A stretch of 64,000 nucleotides of DNA, taken from the IMG/VR virus record IMGVR_UViG_3300031951_000003, positions 186,001 to 250,000 of that record; one strand, given 5' to 3'. The notes beneath the pieces were generated by a model. It had not been told where the DNA came from. It was given only the letters and a program-made list of their open reading frames with translations, and ran no database searches. This document shows positions 31,372-60,808 of this stretch, in pieces. Position 1 is the stretch's first letter. Each line of letters starts with the position of its first letter. The position numbers and the translations under genes are program-made.

Positions 31372-31430
31372 TGTGGATAAATAGTTATTCCCACCCCCTA
31401 TACATTTATCAACAGATAGGATGTGGAAAA
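31372..31430. promoter_or_regulatory. DnaA-box-like cluster 1
   Basis: TGTGGATAA (perfect, 31372-31380), TTATCAACA (31406-31414), TGTGGAAAA (31422-31430). Confidence 0.55.
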
Positions 31431-31445
31431 GTTAATTTGGTTTTG

Positions 31446-31940
31446 TCAGAATGTCCGATTTCGTTCAGTGAATACTGCGTCAGATGGTATCTCTTTTATC
31501 TCGGGGATAATCCATGACCCCACCACGAAGCTTCTACCTTTACGTATCTTAAGGTCTTCGGGGATTGCGTTAGATGTGGATACAGATTTCATTGTCTTCT
31601 CCACGTCGGCTTGTATATCTTGTGTCTGTTCTCTATCCACATTAAACATTGTGGCGAGGTATGAGGTTTCATAAGTGTTTGGGAGGTGATGACCAAGTCT
31701 TTTATCCAAATAATATCTTAGGTATGATACCATTGGCCACCCCGTTTGTTTTTGTAGGATGAAGGGGTCCACGAACACGTCGAGGAAGATGAGGTTATAT
31801 TGGTTTATCTCCTCATCACTTGGGACCCTGATATCTATAATCCATGGGTATTCCCTTTTAAGAATCCTTTTGATTAACTTATACTCATAGGAGCTTTCCA
31901 CTTCATCTTTGGTTACATAGTTATGTTGTTCGACAGGCAT
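31446..31940 (-). CDS. Hypothetical protein
   Basis: ILKREYPWIIDIRV; ATAAATA upstream. Confidence 0.55.
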   Translation of the reverse strand: MPVEQHNYVTKDEVESSYEYKLIKRILKREYPWIIDIRVPSDEEINQYNLIFLDVFVDPFILQKQTGWPMVSYLRYYLDKRLGHHLPNTYETSYLATMFNVDREQTQDIQADVEKTMKSVSTSNAIPEDLKIRKGRSFVVGSWIIPEIKEIPSDAVFTERNRTF

Positions 31941-32097
31941 TAAAAAAAATAAATTTGGTTATATCATAAATACTTCGGACCTTTGTTATGTCTGAAGCGG
32001 GAGTGTATGGACGGGCTGGGGAATAACCCTTGGAGCTGAATCAGAGGTAGCTTGCTTATACCCCATGGATAAGATTTCTTTTGGTGGAATGAAATAA

Positions 32098-32514
32098 TTG
32101 TCGTATCTTTGCCTTATGTTATATCTTAAAACCCCGACCATCACGATGACCACCCCATATATTAGGGACGTGGTTGGTGAGACCATTATGTGGTGTGAGA
32201 AGAACATGGGAAAAAAAAGGAAGAGGACCAAACTTAAGTTTAGGGTTCTGACTCAGACCCATGGGGAAAATTGTTATGGGATGTATGACCCCAAAAAGAA
32301 TACCATCATCGTCCACAGAAATATGTGTCAGTCGGTGAGAGATGTGGTGAAGGTTGTCATTCATGAGTATACCCATTTTCTTCAGGACCTTCGTGGATAT
32401 TCGAAGGTATTAAGGGAAGTTGGATATAGAAGACACCCACAAGAAGTTGAGGCGAGGGGGAATGAAAAATTGTTTTCGAAATGTTGGACCGATATAAAAA
32501 ATAACTTATGTTAA
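32098..32514 (+). CDS. HEXXH zinc metallopeptidase-like protein
   Basis: VVIHEYTHFLQ...HPQEVEA. Confidence 0.7.
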   Translation: MSYLCLMLYLKTPTITMTTPYIRDVVGETIMWCEKNMGKKRKRTKLKFRVLTQTHGENCYGMYDPKKNTIIVHRNMCQSVRDVVKVVIHEYTHFLQDLRGYSKVLREVGYRRHPQEVEARGNEKLFSKCWTDIKNNLC

Positions 32515-32719
32515 GAATTATTTATTTTCTTATTCTTGGGTTTCTGTTTGTTTGGGGTTGGAATCATATCCCGAACTTTATGGCTTACCTTTTCGTGGGA
32601 GCCCTTGTTGCATTTTTCATCAAACAAACAAAAGATTAAATGAGACGATTTTTAAAAGCCCTTCTTGTTGGCTACATTATCCTTGGTGTGTGGGATATTC
32701 TCTTTGGAAAAAAGAAACC

Positions 32720-33001
32720 TTAGAGCCCCGCCCCTCTTATTAACTCCCTACACTTCTCTATTATCTGAGTTGGGGTAATGGACTCGTCTTTCGTATAGAG
32801 TCCCTCCACTTTTGCATCCACGCATGCCCATGCGTTTAGTCCGATAGGTTTTCTTACAAACCCCGTCTTTGCCTTCTCGAAATATAAAATCCCTAAGTGT
32901 TCCCTCAGGTCCCCGAGCTTGAAACTTACCTCCACCGATATTCGGTCAGGGGTAATCAGTGTGATATCAAATGACAGTTTGTCCATGGTCCCATTAAACA
33001 T
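32720..33001 (-). CDS. Hypothetical protein
   Basis: ORF track. Confidence 0.5.
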   Translation of the reverse strand: MFNGTMDKLSFDITLITPDRISVEVSFKLGDLREHLGILYFEKAKTGFVRKPIGLNAWACVDAKVEGLYTKDESITPTQIIEKCRELIRGAGL

Positions 33002-33028
33002 AGTTTAGGAACATATAAAAATAAAGAA

Positions 33029-33210
33029 TGTGGAAAACTTCTTTTGGTCCTGACGCTATGTCAGTGTGGAAAACTTTTCTTTCGTTGGGGGTAAATGTGG
33101 ATAACTTTTTTTGATTTTGTCATAATGTCAGGGGAGCGTTGCATAGGGGATAATCCCCTCGACCCATTTTCCCCCACTTTTCCCCACCACTCATTCCCAC
33201 ATTTTCCCAC
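33029..33210. promoter_or_regulatory. DnaA-box-like cluster 2 with pyrimidine-rich TTCCC(C)AC repeats
   Basis: TGTGGAAAA at 33029 and 33065, TGTGGATAA (perfect) at 33096-33104, AGGGGA-taa-TCCCCT at 33145-33159. Confidence 0.55.
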
Positions 33211-33513
33211 CACTTATGGTCATGTAGATAGTGTAAAGACCACTTTTTCCCCTCTCACGGTATCAGGAAGACCAGTTTTTTAATATGTATGTTTCTTAGC
33301 AAAAAAAGGAAGATTAAGTATGAGACGGGGGGAGTGAACGTAGTGAACCTTTAATGTGTATTAATTAACCTTCAACGAGAGGGACATTTTGTCTCCCTGT
33401 AGCGATGGACAAGTAGTATATGGTGGTAAAATGTGGAGGTAAAAAGTTATAGATATGATTATAGTTTATCACGATAGTGTTGTATATTGTAATCATGTTT
33501 ATAACTTATCATA

Positions 33514-33589
33514 TATCGTTTCGTTATACGATATGTCATTATATCGTGTGAATATACGATTGTCTATAATATCGTTTCATTAGACGATT
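33514..33589. repeat. Three tandem palindromes TATCGT-N8-ACGATW at 28-bp period
   Basis: Copies at 33514-33533, 33542-33561 and 33570-33589. Confidence 0.85.
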
Positions 33590-33690
33590 ATGTAATCACC
33601 ATCTCATCTGTCCCCTCACTGAGTGGGGGGAACTTATGGGTGGGGGAAAAGTCAAGTTCATATACTGTGTAGTCTTACTTTTTTATGTAA

Positions 33691-33712
33691 AAGTAAAGTT
33701 ATAACTTTACTT
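33691..33712. promoter_or_regulatory. 22-bp perfect palindrome, probable operator
   Basis: AAGTAAAGTTATAACTTTACTT, 21 bp upstream of ATG 33734. Confidence 0.6.
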
Positions 33713-33733
33713 AAATGGGTGATACTTATTACT

Positions 33734-34192
33734 ATGATATACTTTATAGAAAATTTAGAAACCAAACACATTAAAATTGGTTTCACTACAGATATTAAAA
33801 ATAGACTAAGTAACTTACAGACATCTTCACCATATGAGTTAAAAGTGTTAGCGGTTTGTGAAGGAAATGATAAAACCGAAAAAGAATTACATATTAAATT
33901 TAACGATTACCATACCAGAGGAGAGTGGTTTAATCCTAATAAAGAATTGATTGACTATATCAGTCAGTTCCCCCCATATAAGTCAGATAACAAACAACAC
34001 GGTAATTTAGCTAGTCTAAGAAAACAGAAGAAGATGAGTATGGAAGAAGTTGGTAAAAAAATGAAGATAAGTAAACAAGCTGTTTCAGATATCGAAAAGA
34101 GATACGAATATGGTAATATAACAATCAAAAACCTTAGGTCATATCTTGATGCTATTGGTTATGATGTTACTATAGTTTTCTCGCCGAAATAA
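33734..34192 (+). CDS. T5orf172 (GIY-YIG-like) domain fused to XRE-family HTH
   Basis: MIYFIE...IKIGFT...RLSNLQTSSPYEL...EKELH..F.....RGEWF; LASLRKQKKMSMEEVGKKMKISKQAVSDIE. Confidence 0.8.
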   Translation: MIYFIENLETKHIKIGFTTDIKNRLSNLQTSSPYELKVLAVCEGNDKTEKELHIKFNDYHTRGEWFNPNKELIDYISQFPPYKSDNKQHGNLASLRKQKKMSMEEVGKKMKISKQAVSDIEKRYEYGNITIKNLRSYLDAIGYDVTIVFSPK

Positions 34193-34285
34193 GATTATAC
34201 AACAAGTGAGTGAATGAAGGACACTCCCGAACCTTTAGGTGAGGGATGTATTGTGTCCGTAGTGAATGAACTTGTTGTATAATCT
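34192..34285. repeat. Structured element copy 1 (nested hairpin)
   Basis: 16-bp perfect outer stem AGATTATACAACAAGT/ACTTGTTGTATAATCT; inner GGACAC/GTGTCC, TCCC/GGGA and ACC-ttta-GGT. Confidence 0.8.
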
Positions 34286-35036
34286 AAACTTGATAAACTT
34301 CATATGAGATAGGGATAGATAGTGATTGTTTGATGTTATCAATCATGCCCGTTCTTTGTTTAACATTTCCCCATGTAATGAAGAAAAGACCATTTTCTAA
34401 CTGAATGAAGCTATTTCTGTTCATTTTTTTTGGGTCTGAAGTCATAGACGAAGGGAGTTCATCTTTTGTCTTTTTGAAGTAATTGGGTAACTTGGTAAGT
34501 AAAACTTCAGGTGAGAAATTGGTTGAGAGATACTGACCAAGAAGAACATATCTATCAATAGTTGTATCCGCGACAAATTCAGTATTATCAATAAAGATTT
34601 TGATTGAAGACCTGACTTTTTTGATATTTTCTAAAATCTCAATTTTTTGAGTTTGAGTGGTCCCTGAATCTGAGACAATTGATTCAGTTAAATCAAGTTC
34701 AAGTGTTTCGGGAAAATAATTGGTAAGTTTAGTAATTTTTTTGTGTAATAAATCCTCATCATCACAATCAAACCATTCAGTGGTAATACTTTTTCTATCG
34801 TTATATTCTTTAGTAACTCTATATTCTTCGAAACATGCGTGGAGGGCCTTTTCTAAGGAACTCATGTGATTAGTTTGGAATATACGTATAAACACAACGT
34901 CCACAGGCATGTGTGTAGAATTTAACGCGGTTTCTCGGGATTTATAATCTATGGACCGACCTAACTTATAATAATTCGTTATAAAATTACCAAGATGGTC
35001 AACCATTCTTCCAATGTAACAATAACCTTGACTCAT
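34284..35036 (-). CDS. T5orf172 (GIY-YIG-like) nuclease with C-terminal putative DNA-binding domain
   Basis: GYCYIG...YYKLGRS...RETALNST...LEKALH...TEWF. Confidence 0.75.
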   Translation of the reverse strand: MSQGYCYIGRMVDHLGNFITNYYKLGRSIDYKSRETALNSTHMPVDVVFIRIFQTNHMSSLEKALHACFEEYRVTKEYNDRKSITTEWFDCDDEDLLHKKITKLTNYFPETLELDLTESIVSDSGTTQTQKIEILENIKKVRSSIKIFIDNTEFVADTTIDRYVLLGQYLSTNFSPEVLLTKLPNYFKKTKDELPSSMTSDPKKMNRNSFIQLENGLFFITWGNVKQRTGMIDNIKQSLSIPISYEVYQV

Positions 35037-35175
35037 AAATTATTTTATGAGCTAAAATAAAAAATATTTTTCTTCTTACAAAAAATTATTTTACCCCCTC
35101 ACTTATGCGGGGGGTTTATTAGGTGGGGGGTTATCTTTAATCTTGTATGAATCAACAAGGATTACTTAACAGTTC

Positions 35176-41003: not shown

Positions 41004-41588
41004 TCAGAATGGATAATCATAGTTTAACATACTACAGTAGTCTTGAGAACAGGAAAAAATAATATCTTTGATTTCCTGAGTGAAATATTTGTCAACGTCA
41101 TTTATGACATCGGTATCATTATCTTTAATAGAACATAAATTTCTAATTTGAACTAATTTATCGAAATCGGAATTTGCTATGAAAGGTATTTTATTGTAAT
41201 CATCATAAAGATTTTCGATTCTGATAAAATAATCCGGAGTCCTTTCCTTAAATGGCCAAATTATACATCTCAATGTTGTTTTAGGAAAGTTCATATAAAA
41301 ATAGTTCTGAAAACTTTCAGGACTCCAAATATTCGGATTTTTGTGATTAAATTTATAAAAAGATAAAATTCTTGAAAATGGATTTCGAGCCGTAGATAAA
41401 AAAATATAATCTTTGTGTCCGCTTGGATAATCGAAGGAATGGTTATTGTTTAACGGGATTACTTTCAAACCATCAGGCGTTTTTTTGTAAGTTGAAAATC
41501 CGTAGTTTTTCAAAACTTTTACACAATGAACCGAACCTGTTCTAGCTTGTAACCAAACAAATGATTTATTAATTTCTGATATGTTCAT
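41004..41588 (-). CDS. Sulfotransferase family 2-like protein
   Basis: [28 protein letters not shown]. Confidence 0.7.
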
Positions 41589-42793
41589 ACGAAAACTTTG
41601 GGTATTTCATCCCAAGATGTGGTATACTTTTGGGACATGAAATCTTGTCTCATCTCCCACTCTTTTTTTTTGTTTATGGGTGCCTGAACTAACTGTATTG
41701 AAGTTGTAAATAAAGTGGGTTGTTCTATATTCTCGGGCATAAGTTCATTAAATATAATTCCACATTTTTTATAATTCTTACTTGAGTTATAAATTTTCTT
41801 TAAGTGTGGATATACCTGGCTCCATATTTCATCCACATCTCTTGTTTGTTTTTGAAATGTAATCTGTTTACTCGAGTAATGTTTTTCACCTTTATGAACA
41901 TTTCCACTTAAAAATATGGTTGCTCGGTTTGGTGATATTTCATTATCAATAAGTTTTTTCACCCCGTTTTTAATATATGTATACATGGCCTCAGATAATT
42001 GATTAAAATCATTTACGTCTTGTCCGAATGACCTTGTTGATGCTATGTTCTTTTTTAACTTTGGTAATGGTTTTACAGGATGACAATACATACCAAGAAG
42101 TTCACACTTTGTTCTAAGTCCATTTACATTCATCATTTTTCTGACAATACTATCAGACATCATAACAAATTGACCAACACTCTCAACTCCTAAGTTTTTT
42201 AATTTTTTATTCCACTGTCTACCAATACCCCAAACCTCATCTACAGATATTGTGTAAAGTGATTCCCTAAAATCATGCAAACTCCAATATGAACAAACAC
42301 CATCGTATGATTGTTGTTGTTTGGCTATATGTGATGTAAGTTTGGCTAATGTCTTATTTGGACCGACACCTATTGAAACAGGAACTCCTGTAAGTCTTTT
42401 AACCTCATTACGAATAAGATGTAATCTATCTAAAAGTTCATCATCGGGTATATTAGAAAAATCCACAAAACACTCATCAATAGAATAGACCTCAACTTCT
42501 TTAGCATACTTCTTTATGGTTGTCATGACTCTGTCTGACATATCTCCATACAAGTTATAGTTTGATGAATAAACACAGAATCTATGTTCTTCCATGAAGT
42601 CTTTTTTCATAAAGAAAGGTTCACCCATTTTGATTCCAAGGGCTTTGGCTTCTTGAGAGCGGGCAATAACACAACCATCGTTGTTAGATAAAACAACTGT
42701 AGGTCTCCCAATGGAGATTGGATTGAAAACTCTTTCACAACTAACGTAAAAATTGTTACAATCTACAATACCGATTTTTTTATTGGACTGCAT
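41585..42793 (-). CDS. umuC: Y-family DNA polymerase V catalytic subunit
   Basis: [42 protein letters not shown]-terminal [16 protein letters not shown]. Confidence 0.93.
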
Positions 42794-45799: not shown

Positions 45800-46906
45800 T
45801 TAGTCAAGTTGCTTAACCAAATTTAACGCTTGTGCAATTATTTGGTGCATGTCGTAATAAACGTATGTTGCTAATCTACCACCAAAATAATAATTTGGTA
45901 AATCATTCGTCAATTCTTTATACTTTTCGTAAATTAGGGTATTTCTATCGTCTCTTATTGGATAGTAAGGTTCATTCTCACCATTATAATCTGCAGGGAA
46001 TTCATAACTAATAATTGTTCCTTTTTGATTTTGTGGGTCAAACCACTTATGTTCTAATATTCTTGTGTATGGTGTTTCTCGGTCAGTATAGTTAACCACG
46101 GGAACCCCTTGAAAATTATCTTTTTCCAAACGTTTTGTTTCCCATTCCAAACTTCTATATTCTAAATTTCCATAAAGGTAGTCAAAAAATCTATCTATGG
46201 GACCTGTGTAGATTACCTTTTGAGCTAGCGAATCATGATATAACTTCGATTCGAAGTAGTCTACCCCTAATTCAACATCACATTTCTGTAACATCTTTTC
46301 AAATATTTGAGTATAACCTCCAATTGGCATCCCTGTATATTTGTCATTGAAGTAATTACTATCCCAAGTAAACCTTAAAGGTAATCTTTTGATAATTGAC
46401 GGGGGTAGTTCCTGACAGTTTTTGTTCCATTGTTTTTCAGTATATCCCTTGATGAGTTTCTGATAAATTTCATCACCCACCATTGACATTGCCTGTTCTT
46501 CGAGATTGGTTATCTTTCCCTTATATTTAATCTCCTCAATAATTTGTTTCGCTCTTTCAGGTTCGTTGACTTTCCAAAGTTGATTGAATGTCCACATGTT
46601 GAATGGTAATGTAAACATTTCGCCCTTGTAGTTCGCAATTACATTATGTGTGTATTGTCTAAACTCGGCAAATTGATTCACGTAATCCCAAATATGTTTG
46701 TCGTTGGTATGGAAAATATGTGCACCATATTTGTGAACGTGAATACCGTCCACGTTTTCAGTATAACAGTTTCCACCTATTACAGGTCTTTTATCAATTA
46801 CCAAACATTTTTTTCCTTTCTTAGTTAGTTCGTAAGCACAAACGGAACCGAATGGTCCCGCCCCTACTATCAAATAATCATATTTTGGAAAATTCAATAA
46901 AATCAT
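45800..46906 (-). CDS. glf: UDP-galactopyranose mutase
   Basis: YDYLIVGAG, HKYGAHIFHT, YRSL, EPYYP, GRLATYVYYDMHQ. Confidence 0.95.
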   Translation of the reverse strand: MILLNFPKYDYLIVGAGPFGSVCAYELTKKGKKCLVIDKRPVIGGNCYTENVDGIHVHKYGAHIFHTNDKHIWDYVNQFAEFRQYTHNVIANYKGEMFTLPFNMWTFNQLWKVNEPERAKQIIEEIKYKGKITNLEEQAMSMVGDEIYQKLIKGYTEKQWNKNCQELPPSIIKRLPLRFTWDSNYFNDKYTGMPIGGYTQIFEKMLQKCDVELGVDYFESKLYHDSLAQKVIYTGPIDRFFDYLYGNLEYRSLEWETKRLEKDNFQGVPVVNYTDRETPYTRILEHKWFDPQNQKGTIISYEFPADYNGENEPYYPIRDDRNTLIYEKYKELTNDLPNYYFGGRLATYVYYDMHQIIAQALNLVKQLD

Positions 46907-48057
46907 TTGAAATCAAAATTGAAACTTTCAGAATCAATAACATGTTCCTCAGTTTTTCTTGTCAATCTCTCTTTGTATTCAACAAGAAAATTCCCTGTGT
47001 TGGTATAAGCCCTACTTTCAATTAAAAAGGATTTGACAGGGAAAGGGTTTTTTCTTTCAGGTTCCATCATCTTGTCGATTACCTGAATTGCTTCTTGAGT
47101 TTTACCTAATGAATCATAATGGAATGCAAGATAAAGTAAGTTTTCATTTCTATCTTTACTAAACTCGCTCGCTAACTTGAAAACCTCCTCGGCTTTCGCA
47201 TGTTCACCCAAGAAATCATAAGACCATCCCATAACAATCAAACCAAAGTAAGCCATCTCATCTTCATATTTTGGTTTTTTCTCAACACCCCAAACATGTG
47301 TCAATTCCATGAATCTTTCATAATACCACAAAGACCTTCTAGCATATTCTTCTGAGTGTTTTCTTCCGAAAGGTAATTCGCTCGAGTTCCCATAACAATC
47401 AGCATAACTCTTAGCAATATACCAAAGGTGATAGTAATCTTCATGAACCTTGTTTCCTACAACTTTATCAATTTCCAGTTCGAGTGCATCTCTTAAAAAC
47501 TTTCTTGGTGCCGCCCAAGTATCACCATCTTGTGAAACGATGTGTCTGAGCCCATAGGGCATGTTAATTCTTTGAAAATCTTCACCAATTTCAGGAAGAT
47601 GAATTGTTTCGTGTCTTTTGTCGTGTGCAAAAAACCAAGGTAATTTAGCATTCCAAAACCAAGTTCTGAAATAATTTGTATCGCCGGCTTGTGCTGCAAT
47701 ATTGTAACTTTGTATTTGTGTGTTTTCTAAAATTGACCAATCGAAATCTGAATCAACATGAAGGGTCTCATCCGCATCCATCCTCAAAACCCAGTCACAA
47801 CCATGTTCTGATGAAAGACATTTTTGTAGGGTATGGTCTCTATTCCAACCAGGAAAATTCCAATCGATTTTATAAGTGAAACCTGGAATGTTTTTGGTTT
47901 GAAAAAAAACATTAATTTTGGACTCTGTGTCATCGTTTCCATTACATTGGATTACATAGTAATCAATATAAGGTGCCACTGATTCTAACATTCTCATGAT
48001 GGTTTTGGATTCATTTCCAACCATCGAGTTCAATACAATTTTTGCTTTCTTATTCAT
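46903..48057 (-). CDS. GT2-like glycosyltransferase with TPR-like C-terminus
   Basis: NESKTIMRML; WVLRMDADE (DxD); RHETIH; helical repeats. Confidence 0.75.
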   Translation of the reverse strand: MNKKAKIVLNSMVGNESKTIMRMLESVAPYIDYYVIQCNGNDDTESKINVFFQTKNIPGFTYKIDWNFPGWNRDHTLQKCLSSEHGCDWVLRMDADETLHVDSDFDWSILENTQIQSYNIAAQAGDTNYFRTWFWNAKLPWFFAHDKRHETIHLPEIGEDFQRINMPYGLRHIVSQDGDTWAAPRKFLRDALELEIDKVVGNKVHEDYYHLWYIAKSYADCYGNSSELPFGRKHSEEYARRSLWYYERFMELTHVWGVEKKPKYEDEMAYFGLIVMGWSYDFLGEHAKAEEVFKLASEFSKDRNENLLYLAFHYDSLGKTQEAIQVIDKMMEPERKNPFPVKSFLIESRAYTNTGNFLVEYKERLTRKTEEHVIDSESFNFDFK

Positions 48058-49297
48058 AAGTGTAGTTCATTACTCCTTCTTCGTCGAAGTATTTTTTTAT
48101 TGGAACGTGGTTTTGAAATTTGTGGGAGTGTCCTCTCTCTTCATTCCAATACCAATCATCGAAACCAAGCTCTTTGATTCTATCATGAATCCTTTTGTCG
48201 TAGTGGTCTCTGATTAATCTCGCCCTTCTGTTTATATCATAAGCATTGTTATCAACAGTGCTATTACGATTGTTGTATTGTAAGTATAACATTCTTTTCA
48301 CGTGAATAAACCTTGTATGTAAGAATGTTCTGACAATCATTTCAAAGTCATCGGCTACCGGGGTTAGTTTGTTGTGACCACCGAGTTCATGATAGAGCTT
48401 TCTTTCCCACATTCTTATGTGGTCGGGCATTGAGATGTTGAAACGGATTGTCAATGGATTGATATCTGGATACCAATGTGCCAGATACTTTTGTCCATCA
48501 GCATAAACCCACGAGTGTCCTGCATAACCGAAGTCAAAAAAGTTATCAGGTCTAGCATACCAATTACCTGACCAATCATGGTCATAAGACTTCATTTCAC
48601 CATCATCGTATAACTCACATACATCAGTATACAAGAAACCAGCATCAGGGTATTTTTCGATTGCGTCATTACAAACCTCCAAACAATCACTTATGAGTGC
48701 ATCATCGTGGTCCAATTCACAAAGCCAATCTCCATCACACAACATAGCCGCCCTGTTTTTAGCTAACCCTACATTACCCCCTGAAGTGGGATATATTTTG
48801 TGTATCTTTACTCTGTAATCAATGTTCGAAAATTCCTTCAACAAGTTCCAAGTCTCGTCATCTGGCGAATCATCAACAACAACCCATTCCCAATTTGTGA
48901 ATGTTTGATTCTTCAAACTTTCATAAGTTCTCCTTATTCTCTCTCCTGTTTTATATGTTGGTGTAAAAATTGAGAATCTCGGTCTTTGATAGTCAGTATT
49001 TTTGAATACCGTTTGACAAACAACTATGTTTGCTAAAACGTTATCCTGAGGTAAGAATTCGTAATGAACATGTTTTTGTTTTAAGAAATAATGAGGAACT
49101 TCGATTTCATCTATAAAGGACAGGATAACATCAGGTTGATATTTCGTATAATCCCCCGCCACATCATTGGTATAGGGTAATGCATAAATGGTGACTTCAT
49201 CATAAAGTCTTTCCTCGAAGTAAATATCAGATTCTAAAATGAATTTCCCTGTGGAAACCCAACCGTAAACTATCGCACTAGGTTTTTTTGTCTTCAT
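48050..49297 (-). CDS. GT2 glycosyltransferase
   Basis: FSIFTPTYK, WEWVVVDDS, ELDHDD, ADDFEM. Confidence 0.88.
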   Translation of the reverse strand: MKTKKPSAIVYGWVSTGKFILESDIYFEERLYDEVTIYALPYTNDVAGDYTKYQPDVILSFIDEIEVPHYFLKQKHVHYEFLPQDNVLANIVVCQTVFKNTDYQRPRFSIFTPTYKTGERIRRTYESLKNQTFTNWEWVVVDDSPDDETWNLLKEFSNIDYRVKIHKIYPTSGGNVGLAKNRAAMLCDGDWLCELDHDDALISDCLEVCNDAIEKYPDAGFLYTDVCELYDDGEMKSYDHDWSGNWYARPDNFFDFGYAGHSWVYADGQKYLAHWYPDINPLTIRFNISMPDHIRMWERKLYHELGGHNKLTPVADDFEMIVRTFLHTRFIHVKRMLYLQYNNRNSTVDNNAYDINRRARLIRDHYDKRIHDRIKELGFDDWYWNEERGHSHKFQNHVPIKKYFDEEGVMNYTYE

Positions 49298-59311: not shown

Positions 59312-59343
59312 CAAATATAAGACACAAACCCTATTATGCCAAA
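59312..59343 (-). promoter_or_regulatory. Bacteroidota sigma-A promoter (followed by a TATTTAT motif)
   Basis: TTTG-N20-TATATTTG, then TATTTATAGATATG. Confidence 0.7.
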
Positions 59344-60599
59344 AGTTTTTTTCCTGCTCTTTCTCTATGAAACTTTATTGCAAACCTGTGAACCTCTTCT
59401 TGAATAACTCCGAGAACGGACCAATCCATTGGATGTTGTTTACCATCAGTTGTATGAACGGTCTGTGACCTGTGTTTTTGGTCTTTCGAAATTGATATCA
59501 AATCAATCCTGTTGGTAAGTCCAAGAGACTCAAATACCTTCTTTGCAACGTTTAATTGACCAATTCCCCCATCAATTAGAACAAGGTCAGGTAGTTGACC
59601 CTTTTCATCCAAGAGTCTCTTAAAACGTCTGTAAACCACTTCCTCGAATGACAGACAATCATTACCATTGTTTGACTCCTCACGAATGATATACTTACGG
59701 TATTCACTCTTGAGAGGTTTGTTATTCACATATCTTACAGAGGCCGCAACATTTGAGTCACCCTGATTGTGTGAGTTGTCAAACGCCTCGATAATCAAAG
59801 GAAGATTTTTAAGACCCAAAACCTTTTTTATACCAAAGGCAATCTTGTTATATTTCCTTACACGGATGGGTTCGAGTTTCTCTTCAAGTTTTTTGATTTG
59901 ATTAACCCTGTTGAGGTAGTTGTCCGCCTTTTCGAACTCCAAGTTCTTGGCAAACTCATGCATTTTTCCTGTGAGAAACACCTTTAACATCTTATAATCA
60001 AGTTCGAATATCTTTCGAACAATTAATTGATACTTCAGATATTCAAGGTTCGATTCCAAGGCAATGCAGGGTGCGTTACAACGACCAATATGATACTCAA
60101 GACATGGTTTGAATTTACCTGCCCCGATGTTTTCTTGATTCAAAGTATAGGAACAAGTTCTAAGTGGAAGGATGTCGTTGATAAGTTCCATAACTTCATA
60201 CGCCCTTTGACCTGAGGTGAAGTTGATTCCACAGGTGTCCTCACCTTTCCCATGAGTTATTTGAAGTTTGGAGTATGGTCCACCAGTCAAAGACAAATGC
60301 CAAGTTCTTGACTTATCATCTTTACCTTTGATGTTGAACTTGGGTTTGTAAATTTTGATGAGTTCTTCCTCCATGATGAGAGCCTCAGCCTCAGATGAAG
60401 CAATCTGATACTCAACGTCACGTATTTGTTCAACAAGGGTCCTTGTCTTCTTGTCATCGTGTTTCTTATTGAAATAAGACGCAACACGTTTGGGAAGGAA
60501 CTTGGACATCCCCACATATATTACCTGGTCTTTGCCATCTTTGTAGATGTAACAACCAGGGTATTTGGGAGCTGATTTTATTTTTTCTTTGATGTCCAT
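59334..60599 (-). CDS. uvrC: UvrC-like excinuclease lacking the C-terminal HhH domain
   Basis: PGCYIYKD...IYVG; CLEYHIGRCNAPC; IEAFDNSH; PDLVLIDGG; EVHRFAI; start moved to MDIKEK. Confidence 0.88.
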   Translation of the reverse strand: MDIKEKIKSAPKYPGCYIYKDGKDQVIYVGMSKFLPKRVASYFNKKHDDKKTRTLVEQIRDVEYQIASSEAEALIMEEELIKIYKPKFNIKGKDDKSRTWHLSLTGGPYSKLQITHGKGEDTCGINFTSGQRAYEVMELINDILPLRTCSYTLNQENIGAGKFKPCLEYHIGRCNAPCIALESNLEYLKYQLIVRKIFELDYKMLKVFLTGKMHEFAKNLEFEKADNYLNRVNQIKKLEEKLEPIRVRKYNKIAFGIKKVLGLKNLPLIIEAFDNSHNQGDSNVAASVRYVNNKPLKSEYRKYIIREESNNGNDCLSFEEVVYRRFKRLLDEKGQLPDLVLIDGGIGQLNVAKKVFESLGLTNRIDLISISKDQKHRSQTVHTTDGKQHPMDWSVLGVIQEEVHRFAIKFHRERAGKKLLA

Positions 60600-60808
60600 T
60601 CTTTTCTGTGTTTGTAAAACCAATAGGAGTGAATGATGATAACGCACGAATTTACAACAATTGTCGGACCTGCCGAAATTCCGAATCCATAAACTAACCA
60701 AAAAATTGCGCCAACCGTGTTGACCGCTCTAAGACGGAAAACGTCCTCAATTAGGAATGAACCTAAAATGAGGACGCTCCCGATATATCCATATATTTCC
60801 CACATCAT
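60578..60808 (-). CDS. Small inner-membrane protein (YgjV-like)
   Basis: Three TM segments; RLRAVNTVGAIFWLVYG. Confidence 0.6.
   Translation of the reverse strand: MMWEIYGYIGSVLILGSFLIEDVFRLRAVNTVGAIFWLVYGFGISAGPTIVVNSCVIIIHSYWFYKHRKEWTSKKK

What the first reader, a model, noticed from the sequence alone, without database searches (positions are those of the whole stretch)
33514..33589. Three palindromes TATCGT-N8-ACGATW at an exact 28-bp period
Seen: half-sites are conserved while the 8-nt spacers and 8-nt linkers vary, with starts at 33514, 33542 and 33570. This pattern points to selection on protein-contact bases rather than recent duplication. The array lies in AT-rich non-coding DNA between DnaA cluster 2 and the nuclease-HTH gene. 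Inference: an iteron-like initiator array or a cooperative operator for a dimeric protein.
Basis: seen in the sequence. Interest (0 to 1): 0.65.

Follow-up and report, generated by a model that had tools for sequence, protein, structure and literature searches.

The report
Orphan host-operator array on jumbo phage
Three evenly spaced palindromes in a 321-kb freshwater jumbo phage match the binding-site array that Bacteroidota bacteria keep in front of one little-studied regulator gene, so the phage probably carries a site for a host protein that it does not encode itself.

Summary
TATCGT-N8-ACGAT starts at 33514, 33542 and 33570, exactly 28 bp apart. These are the only three copies in the 321,139-bp phage genome.

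The same paired palindrome at the same period occurs in 65 other viral contigs and in 58 bacterial genomes, almost all Bacteroidota. In the bacteria it is a single-locus array of 2-8 sites. It typically ends about 10 nt before the start codon of a SatD-like protein (cyclase/GGDEF-type fold plus C-terminal HTH), which is followed by a DUF3307 membrane protein.

SatD-like genes found by protein search in other Bacteroidota have upstream arrays of the same geometry but lineage-specific half-sites. That is the pattern of an autoregulatory operator.

No phage genome searched encodes a SatD-like or DUF3307 protein. Related phages carry the array at four different loci, and two complete relatives have none.

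Best reading (about 0.55): an orphan copy of the host SatD-like operator that binds the host regulator. Titration versus local control is open.

The origin-iteron reading and the neighbouring T5orf172-HTH gene as binder are poorly supported. That gene is an insertion missing from the one divergent syntenic relative, which keeps the array.

All binding is inferred; nothing was measured.

The parts
33514..33533 (.). Site R1: TATCGT-N8-ACGATA, a perfect 6+6 palindrome
33542..33561 (.). Site R2: TATCGT-N8-ACGATT. Its spacer gtgaatat is kept as gtgaatac in relative L064.
33570..33589 (.). Site R3: TATCGT-N8-ACGATT. Its spacer ttcattag is kept as ttcatttg in L064.
33467..33476 (.). Lone TATCACGATA (ACGATA half-site), 57 bp left of R1's right half. 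Possibly the relic of a further unit.
   Evidence: inference
33444..33507 (.). AT-rich inverted repeat (25-nt arms, 80% complementary) directly left of the array. It is absent or rearranged in L064.
33610..33652 (+). GC hairpin module, copy 1 (CCCCTCACT...GGGGGG then GGTGGGGG). It marks the left edge of the inserted gene pair.
33691..33712 (.). Perfect 22-bp palindrome 22 nt before the 33734 start codon, unique in the genome. Likelier own operator of the T5orf172-HTH protein.
   Evidence: the role is inference
33734..34192 (+). MUG113/T5orf172 (GIY-YIG-like) plus HTH_3 gene. An insertion relative to L064.
34284..35036 (-). Second T5orf172/MUG113 gene, part of the same insertion.
35090..35130 (+). 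GC hairpin module, copy 2. It marks the right edge of the insertion; L064 has a single module.
33027..33107 (+). Three TGTGGAWAACTT repeats (DnaA-box-like). Five of the nine TGTGGAWAA in the genome lie at window 31372-33104.
33100..33440 (.). Non-coding block with few differences from L064 by eye, which looks better conserved than the flanking proteins (57-78% aa). No Rfam match.

Best explanation
The three palindromes are a phage-borne, gene-less ('orphan') copy of an operator array found in Bacteroidota. In the bacteria that array forms the promoter region of a two-gene operon: a SatD-like regulator (nucleotidyl-cyclase/GGDEF-type palm domain plus C-terminal HTH) followed by a DUF3307 membrane protein. 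Each 20-bp site would bind one dimer of the host's SatD-like protein, and the fixed 28-bp spacing would let neighbouring dimers bind together. The phage has no such protein, so its array would act on the host's copy. Either it soaks the regulator up as the phage DNA multiplies, changing expression of the host operon, or it places nearby phage transcription under that host regulator. What is shown: the identity of motif and geometry, the link to the SatD-like gene in bacteria, the co-variation of half-site with protein lineage, and the absence of the protein from the phages. What is inferred: that binding occurs at all, and what it does in the phage.
For: (1) The paired site at a 28-bp period occurs in 58 bacterial genomes, nearly all Bacteroidota. 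It forms arrays of 2-8 sites, and 115 of 124 intervals are 28 bp. In 52 of 58 loci it abuts a SatD-like gene, typically 10 nt before the ATG. It occupies one locus per genome in 5 whole genomes. (2) The protein matches Pfam SatD (E about 1e-6, 26-29 bits against a cut-off of 29) and, in 2 of the 4 scanned, Sigma70_r4 (one over its cut-off). Its model has pLDDT 92.5, with the N-domain matching GGDEF, class III cyclase and Cas10 palm structures. A homodimer model scores 0.38 against a best control of 0.00; that mark was reached by 21 of 30 solved pairs and 0 of 23 single chains; the runs agree in 100% of contacts and partner pLDDT is at least 88. A DUF3307 gene follows it. (3) A protein-first search found one SatD-like gene in 25 of 151 Bacteroidota sampled. 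Most of the closer matches have upstream arrays of the same geometry (about 6-bp half-sites, usually N8, roughly 28-bp period) with other half-sites: TATCGG, TATAGC, TATAAG, ATTCGA, ATTACC, TATCTG, TATATGC. The residue after the conserved Q of the HTH tracks the half-site type. (4) Viral and bacterial sites share the spacer profile T-ATCGT-yTAwwTAr-ACGAT-A. (5) No SatD-like or DUF3307 protein is found in the phage genomes searched or, by pattern scan, in IMG/VR. (6) A Bacteroidota host is plausible: there is no Shine-Dalgarno enrichment before phage genes (5.4% against 5.7% in the control window), and the phage is a freshwater one. (7) Of 69 viral hits with a free linker, 65 have the 28-bp period. 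A second specificity type (TATCGG) occurs as orphan pairs in 23 further viral contigs, while a composition-matched control type (TATAGC) gives 0.
Against: No binding was measured, and the host is not identified. The SatD Pfam score is just under the curated cut-off. The window's linkers lack the strand-specific TTTG that bacterial linkers carry (35 of 85 against 4 of 85 antisense), and no TAnnTTTG promoter motif lies in this intergenic region. So the phage copy holds only the half-sites. R2 and R3 end in ACGATT, where 95% of bacterial sites have A. A protein-anchored look at another phage locus (locus D) shows the pair is often decayed: of 57 distinct sequences, 25 have two sites, 18 one and 14 none. 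There the last unit is nearly always followed by a T-run, like a terminator. Two complete relatives carry no ATCG-type pair, so any benefit is dispensable. At this locus there is only one divergent relative. An unrecognised phage protein with the same specificity cannot be excluded.
Confidence: 0.55

Rival explanations
1. RNA-level element: the palindromes are transcribed hairpins acting as terminators, 3'-end protectors or pre-tRNA processing signals. On this view the likeness to the bacterial array reflects shared ancestry rather than shared protein binding.
For: In related phages the pair sits 0-2 nt after stop codons or between tRNA genes, so it is transcribed. The last unit is followed by T6-T10 at loci B and D. 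At locus D some relatives have a canonical GC-rich terminator in the same place. Arms change in a compensatory way, and some states pair as G-U. The 101-nt array folds at z = -2.7.
Against: None of the window's three units is followed by a T-run, and the terminator scan finds none here. The stems are invariant while the loops vary, which is the opposite of a purely structural hairpin. The design is used only once per genome. The predicted fold pairs R1 with R2 rather than forming three separate hairpins. Bacterial units with a constant asymmetric mismatch (TATAGG/CCGATA) fit protein binding better than RNA pairing.
Confidence: 0.15
2. Operator, or homing/recognition site, for a phage-encoded protein such as the adjacent T5orf172-HTH.
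For: An HTH_3 domain gene starts 145 bp to the right. In a second context a GIY-YIG/T5orf172 gene also sits directly after the array (L033, L037, L045). So homing-endonuclease-like genes recur beside arrays.
Against: L064 keeps the array but lacks both T5orf172 genes at this locus. Most array-bearing contigs have no such gene beside the array. The gene has its own unique 22-bp palindrome just upstream. The motif is shared with bacterial loci, where the adjacent protein is SatD-like.
Confidence: 0.12
3. Replication-origin iterons for an initiator, working together with the nearby DnaA-box-like cluster.
For: The array is unique in the genome, made of palindromic units and AT-rich. Five of the nine TGTGGAWAA in the genome lie within 2.2 kb to the left. 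The neighbouring non-coding block is strongly conserved.
Against: The array lies at four unrelated loci in related phages, one of them between convergent genes and one abutting a tRNA gene. It is absent from two complete relatives. There is no GC-skew turn or global strand switch here. No initiator gene was recognised among the flanking ORFs scanned. The same array in bacteria is a promoter-proximal element of one operon.
Confidence: 0.07
4. A neutral relic: a piece of host promoter DNA picked up by recombination and drifting without function.
For: Arrays are lost or decayed in many relatives. The promoter-like TTTG parts are gone from the window copy.
Against: The half-sites of R2 and R3 are intact in both the window and L064, while 4 of 8 linker bases and 2 of 16 spacer bases differ. 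Intact pairs occur in 65 plus 23 viral contigs at several loci, always without flanking host genes. The period is kept at 28 bp in 65 of 69.
Confidence: 0.1

Closest known systems
Upstream array of the SatD-like / DUF3307 operon of Bacteroidota (found here; no description located in the paper library)
   Same: Half-site T-ATCGT...ACGAT-A, 8-nt A/T-rich spacer with the same base preferences, 28-bp period, 2-8 units, and one locus per genome.
   Different: The phage copy has no SatD-like or DUF3307 gene beside it or anywhere in the genome. It also lacks the strand-specific TTTG in the linkers and the ACGATATTTGnnnnATG junction.
Host transcription-factor sites carried by phages, such as Spo0A boxes in Bacillus phage phi29 and LexA boxes in CTXphi, GIL01 and coliphage 186 (from my own knowledge, not tested here)
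   Same: A phage genome carries the recognition sequence of a host regulator that it does not encode, which ties the phage to the host's state.
   Different: In those cases the sites overlap defined phage promoters. Here the array moves between loci, in one case lies between convergent genes, and the regulator's function is unknown.
Lambda-type origin iterons bound by O protein (from my own knowledge)
   Same: Three or four regularly spaced units with internal dyad symmetry, next to AT-rich DNA and unique in the genome.
   Different: Lambda's iterons lie inside the initiator gene and are fixed in place. Here no initiator is adjacent, the place varies, and complete relatives lack the array.
Panoptes (mCpol palm-domain cyclase plus membrane effector; papers listed, abstracts only)
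   Same: A two-gene unit pairing a small Cas10/GGDEF-like palm protein with a membrane protein. The SatD-like model matches GGDEF, class III cyclase and Cas10 structures.
   Different: Neither Pfam nor the PADLOC defence library listed an mCpol or Panoptes family for the SatD-like proteins. The SatD-like protein carries an HTH. Whether it makes a nucleotide signal or defends against phage is unknown.

Membership tests
SatD-like regulator operator array (Bacteroidota) | Half-site pair T-ATCGT / ACGAT-A (or a lineage variant) in inverted orientation | tested here: met
   R1-R3 match exactly in the 5-bp cores. R1 also matches in both flanking bases; R2 and R3 have T instead of A after ACGAT.
SatD-like regulator operator array (Bacteroidota) | 8-nt A/T-rich spacer between the half-sites | tested here: met
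   All three units have N8. The spacer profiles of viral and bacterial sites agree.
SatD-like regulator operator array (Bacteroidota) | Two or more units at a 28-bp period | tested here: met
   The window intervals are 28 and 28. In bacteria 115 of 124 intervals are 28 bp, and 65 of 69 viral hits have this period.
SatD-like regulator operator array (Bacteroidota) | Directly upstream of a SatD-like gene followed by DUF3307 | tested here: not met
   No SatD-like or DUF3307 gene is found in this phage or its relatives. Hence the label 'orphan' copy, not a regular member.
SatD-like regulator operator array (Bacteroidota) | Bound by the SatD-like protein | not testable with these tools
   Inferred from adjacency, co-variation and the dimer model. 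EMSA or DAP-seq is needed.
Replication-origin iterons | Same place in related genomes, and present in all of them | tested here: not met
   Four different loci. No ATCG-type pair in complete relatives G161 and G162.
Replication-origin iterons | Initiator gene adjacent or overlapping | tested here: not met
   The neighbours are T5orf172 genes and ORFs with no family hit. No replication-initiator family appeared among the ORFs scanned.
Replication-origin iterons | Replication starts here | not testable with these tools
   GC skew is uninformative. The raw-read run held none of this phage's reads.
Intrinsic terminator | Stable stem followed by a T-run | tested here: not met
   No T-run follows R1, R2 or R3, and the scan lists none at 33514-33589. 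The feature is met at loci B and D of relatives.
Operator of the adjacent T5orf172-HTH protein | The site and the gene occur together in relatives | tested here: not met
   L064 has the array without the gene at this locus. Most array-bearing contigs have other neighbours.

The most novel reading that the evidence does not exclude
Phages of Bacteroidota carry decoy operator arrays. As the phage genome multiplies, the arrays would pull the host's SatD-like palm-domain/HTH regulator off its single chromosomal target, switching a so far uncharacterised two-gene module (cyclase-fold regulator plus DUF3307 membrane protein). That module may itself be a stress or anti-phage system. Three observations would then be traces of an arms race over recognition specificity. 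First, half-site types vary across bacterial lineages. Second, TATCGT-, TATCGG- and hybrid units occur at one and the same phage locus. Third, arrays are repeatedly gained, moved and lost.
Probability: 0.2. Interest if true: 0.85.

Novelty: new variant of a known kind. Interest (0 to 1): 0.62.

Why it matters
The finding gives a concrete, testable DNA target for the SatD-like / DUF3307 gene pair, which is widespread in Bacteroidota. I found no functional description of that pair in two library searches.

It also shows that many phages of this phylum, from ordinary-sized to 320 kb, carry that target without the protein. If the host regulator binds, this is a simple way for a phage to read or disturb a host circuit.

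It would also serve as a host-range marker: the array's half-site type should match the host's regulator type. The fixed geometry with changeable half-sites is a natural series for studying how an HTH changes specificity.

Tried and rejected
- Phage GenBank collection: no similar DNA.
- Rfam: nothing above noise on 32500-34300.
- Sigma-70 scan: a near-consensus leftward promoter (TAGACA-17-TATAAT) has R2 in its spacer. I set it aside because the likely host phylum uses TTTG/TAnnTTTG promoters, and none is present here.
- GC skew across the genome: no turn near the array.
- tRNA link: the window has no tRNA, and the phage's own tRNA-Met has no hairpin pair upstream.
- Reads: an RNA-library contig covers only 32557-32902, and a raw DNA run held none of this phage's reads. 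So there is no information on transcript or molecule ends.
- PADLOC: no defence-family hit for the SatD-like or DUF3307 proteins.
- Literature: two searches for SatD/DUF3307 found nothing relevant; the first was swamped by 'satDNA'.
- 'One array in every genome of the clade': rejected.
- A possible TTATAT-type pair in relative G161 at the homologous region is 40 bp apart and AT-only, so I judged it to be chance.
- CRISPR-like, type III antitoxin-repeat, recombinase res/lox-like and pac-site readings: considered from memory and dropped once the bacterial promoter context was found. They were not tested further.

Full report
**1. The observation**

The sequence shows three units:
- R1, 33514-33533: TATCGT-ttcgttat-ACGATA
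- R2, 33542-33561: TATCGT-gtgaatat-ACGATT
- R3, 33570-33589: TATCGT-ttcattag-ACGATT

They are separated by 8-nt linkers, so the starts are exactly 28 bp apart. In the window the pattern with up to one mismatch finds only these sites. That is 6 strand-wise matches against 0.76 expected, and no shuffle reached 6.

The window is bases 186001-250000 of a 321,139-bp virus record with terminal repeats. In that whole genome the pattern occurs only here. Other spacer lengths give nothing, and the only sites with 0 or 1 mismatch of 12 are these three. No other tandem pair of perfect 6-N8-6 palindromes exists in the genome.

**2. Setting in the window**

The array lies in a 732-bp non-coding stretch. 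Minus-strand genes end at 33001, and a plus-strand gene runs 33734-34192. That gene is MUG113/T5orf172 (GIY-YIG-like) plus HTH_3, and the next gene, 34284-35036 on the minus strand, is also T5orf172.

To the left of the array lie:
- three TGTGGAWAACTT repeats. Five of the nine TGTGGAWAA in the genome cluster at window 31372-33104;
- a C-rich repeat block;
- an AT-rich inverted repeat at 33444-33507.

To the right lie a GC hairpin module (33610-33652) and a perfect 22-bp palindrome (33691-33712), which sits just before the 33734 start. There is no Rfam match, no tRNA in the window, and no GC-skew turn.

**3. Relatives among viruses**

An exact scan of IMG/VR for two units at the 28-bp period found 65 contigs of 4-321 kb. 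With the linker left free (1-31 nt) there were 69 hits: 65 at 28 bp, three at 29 bp and one at 42 bp.

The hits fall into separate settings:
- A: directly before a phage tRNA-Met(CAT) gene (30 contigs, with 0-4 nt to the tRNA);
- B: one nucleotide after the stop codon of a small gene and about 45 nt before the next gene;
- C: the window's own setting. Four of the pattern hits share the window's sequence around the array; the protein-anchored search found five records identical to the window over 8.4 kb, plus one divergent relative, L064;
- D: directly after a 202-aa gene.

Flanking genes of A, B and D map to quite different parts of this phage's genome: 135-141 kb, 156-158 and 255 kb, and 300-311 kb. 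So related jumbo phages carry the array at different loci.

Six records examined had the paired array at a single locus; two of them also have one isolated extra site. But two complete relatives of 322 and 304 kb have no ATCG-type pair at all.

**4. The syntenic relative L064**

L064 is colinear with the window. The non-coding block 33100-33440 shows few differences from the window, which looks more conserved than the flanking proteins at 57-78%.

The array region itself is rearranged, yet it keeps:
- R2 and R3 with intact half-sites and nearly the same spacers;
- an orphan right half of R1;
- a further unit with a 29-nt spacer.

L064 lacks both T5orf172 genes. In the window those genes sit between two copies of the GC hairpin module (33610-33652 and 35090-35130), whereas L064 has one copy. 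The nuclease-HTH gene is therefore an insertion next to a pre-existing array, and not its partner.

**5. The same array in bacteria**

The same exact pattern was scanned over one genome per prokaryote species and hit 58 genomes. Nearly all are Bacteroidota (Mesonia, Algoriphagus, Dysgonomonadaceae, Lentimicrobiaceae, Sphingobacteriaceae and others), plus one Chlorobiota, one Kiritimatiellia and one gammaproteobacterial MAG.

There the units form arrays of 2-8, and 115 of 124 intervals are 28 bp. In 52 of 58 loci the array abuts a gene for a protein of about 205-214 aa that starts MIAVITGDI..., most often 10 nt before its ATG. Several of the remaining loci are cut at contig ends.

The paired site occupies a single locus in each of five whole genomes. 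About the protein:
- It matches Pfam SatD at E about 1e-6, with 26-29 bits, just under the cut-off of 29. Two of the four proteins scanned also match Sigma70_r4, one above its cut-off.
- The next gene, overlapping or within a few nucleotides of its stop codon, is DUF3307 at 98 bits.
- Its AlphaFold model (pLDDT 92.5) has an N-terminal domain matching GGDEF, class III adenylyl cyclase and Cas10 palm structures, followed by C-terminal helices.
- A homodimer model scores 0.38 against a best control of 0.00. That mark was reached by 21 of 30 solved pairs and 0 of 23 single chains. The runs agree in 100% of contacts and partner pLDDT is at least 88. The interface is helices 135-147 and 192-202.

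On the gene's sense strand the linkers read A-TTTT-G/A-AAT-T. TTTG occurs in 35 of 85 linkers, against 4 of 85 for its complement. The last unit typically reads ACGATATTTGnnnnATG.

From general knowledge of Bacteroidota promoters (-33 TTTG and -7 TAnnTTTG), this looks like promoter elements interleaved with the sites. That would also explain the 28-bp period. This last step is inference.

**6. Protein-first test**

A profile of 14 SatD-like proteins (A2) found one copy in 25 of 151 Bacteroidota sampled. Most of the closer matches have upstream arrays of similar geometry but different half-sites: TATCGG/CCGATA, TATAGG/CCGATA, TATAGC/GCTATA, TATAAG/CTTATA, ATTCGA/TCGAAT, ATTACC/GTAAT, TATCTG/CAGATA and TATATGC/GCATATA. 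The most distant homologues show none.

In the HTH, the residue after a conserved Q follows the half-site type: QN[ST] or QS[TV] with TATCGT, QSS with TATCGG, QSN with TATCTG and TATATGC, and QAA with ATTACC (few sequences per type).

The combination of a fixed geometry, a single target per genome and co-varying specificity is what an autoregulatory operator and its own regulator look like.

**7. The phage has the site but not the protein**

- tblastn with ten SatD-like proteins found nothing significant in the phage genome and nothing at E up to 0.01 in the 69 viral loci.
- The Pfam SatD model finds nothing at E up to 10 in this genome.
- The A2 profile finds nothing in this genome or in four of its relatives.
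- DUF3307 is absent from five phage genomes searched.
- A pattern-plus-tblastn scan of all IMG/VR found no relative.

Viral and bacterial sites share the spacer preferences T-ATCGT-yTAwwTAr-ACGAT-A. A second specificity type (TATCGG) occurs as gene-less pairs in 23 further viral contigs of 5-62 kb. A third type of like composition (TATAGC) gives none, which serves as a control for chance.

A Bacteroidota host fits two further facts. There is no Shine-Dalgarno enrichment before phage genes (5.4% against 5.7% in a control window). And the phage occurs in freshwater and lake metagenomes of 15 studies.

**8. What the array does in the phage**

The settings differ. One lies before a tRNA, two lie between genes on the same strand, and locus D is mostly between convergent genes. 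A role as the operator of one particular phage promoter is therefore unlikely.

Two roles remain. One is titration of the host regulator by replicating phage DNA. The other is local control or a roadblock wherever the array happens to sit. I cannot tell them apart.

The protein-anchored view of locus D gives a caution. Of 57 distinct sequences, 25 have two sites, 18 one and 14 none. The last unit nearly always carries a T-run, and some relatives have an ordinary GC-rich terminator in its place. So at some loci the last hairpin probably also works as a terminator, and the first unit often decays. In the window, none of the three units has a T-run.

**9. Verdict**

The 'iteron' reading is weak.

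The finding is a new variant of a known kind, namely host regulator sites carried by phages. I found no description of either the regulator's operator or its presence on phages in the paper library. The loose likeness of SatD-like plus DUF3307 to palm-cyclase plus membrane-effector defence pairs is a lead only; PADLOC has no match.

Reads gave no help on transcripts or molecule ends.

Noticed in passing
window 31372-31430 and 33027-33107: Cluster of DnaA-box-like TGTGGAWAA motifs: five of the nine in the 321-kb genome lie here. It is partly kept in L064 and in G161's homologous region. This could be a DnaA-binding region or an origin.
   Followed up: partly
window 33100-33440: Non-coding block that differs little from L064, which looks better conserved than the flanking proteins. 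It contains C-rich TTTTCCCCAC-type repeats with inverted partners at 33421-33447 and 33640-33650. No Rfam match. In several DNA runs the assemblies break up here and short conserved pieces have high depth.
   Followed up: partly
window 33610-33652 and 35090-35130: Two copies of a GC hairpin module bracket the two T5orf172/MUG113 genes. Relative L064 has one module and no genes. This is the footprint of a homing-endonuclease-like insertion.
   Followed up: yes
window 33691-33712: Perfect 22-bp palindrome (AAGTAAAGTTA/TAACTTTACTT), unique in the genome, 22 nt before the start of the T5orf172-HTH gene. A candidate autoregulatory site of that protein.
   Followed up: no
L005-L068 (30 contigs) and L166: In 30 viral contigs the TATCGT pair ends 0-4 nt before a phage tRNA-Met(CAT) gene. 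An independent TATCGG-type pair does the same in L166. None of the 58 bacterial arrays is near a tRNA. Unexplained.
   Followed up: partly
L033, L037, L045 (about 35 nt after the array): A small GIY-YIG/T5orf172 gene is inserted directly after the array in some locus-B genomes, just as in the window. Homing-endonuclease-like genes recur next to arrays.
   Followed up: partly
L132-L156 and L074-L131 (bacterial loci): The SatD-like proteins of Bacteroidota have a GGDEF/class III cyclase/Cas10-like palm domain with conserved GD(I/V) and RGD(S/F)FQ motifs, plus an HTH. They are always followed by DUF3307. Operator half-sites differ by lineage, and one HTH residue tracks them.
   Followed up: partly
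genome G000 (whole): The phage carries 24 tRNA genes and a tmRNA-like gene at 125-161 kb. It shows no Shine-Dalgarno signal before its genes, and it has two GC-rich islands (about 0.47-0.51 GC) at 1-5 kb and 270-275 kb.
   Followed up: no
window 41585-42793, 45800-49297, 59334-60701: Host-like accessory genes: a Y-family polymerase (IMS), UDP-galactopyranose mutase with a family 2 glycosyltransferase, and a UvrC-like GIY-YIG/RNase H nuclease.
   Followed up: no
L180-L259 (locus D of relatives): Behind one conserved 202-aa gene, relatives carry TATCGT, TATCGG, hybrid, TATTGG, TATATG or TATCAC arms, or a plain GC-rich terminator. This is rapid turnover of the element at a fixed place.
   Followed up: partly
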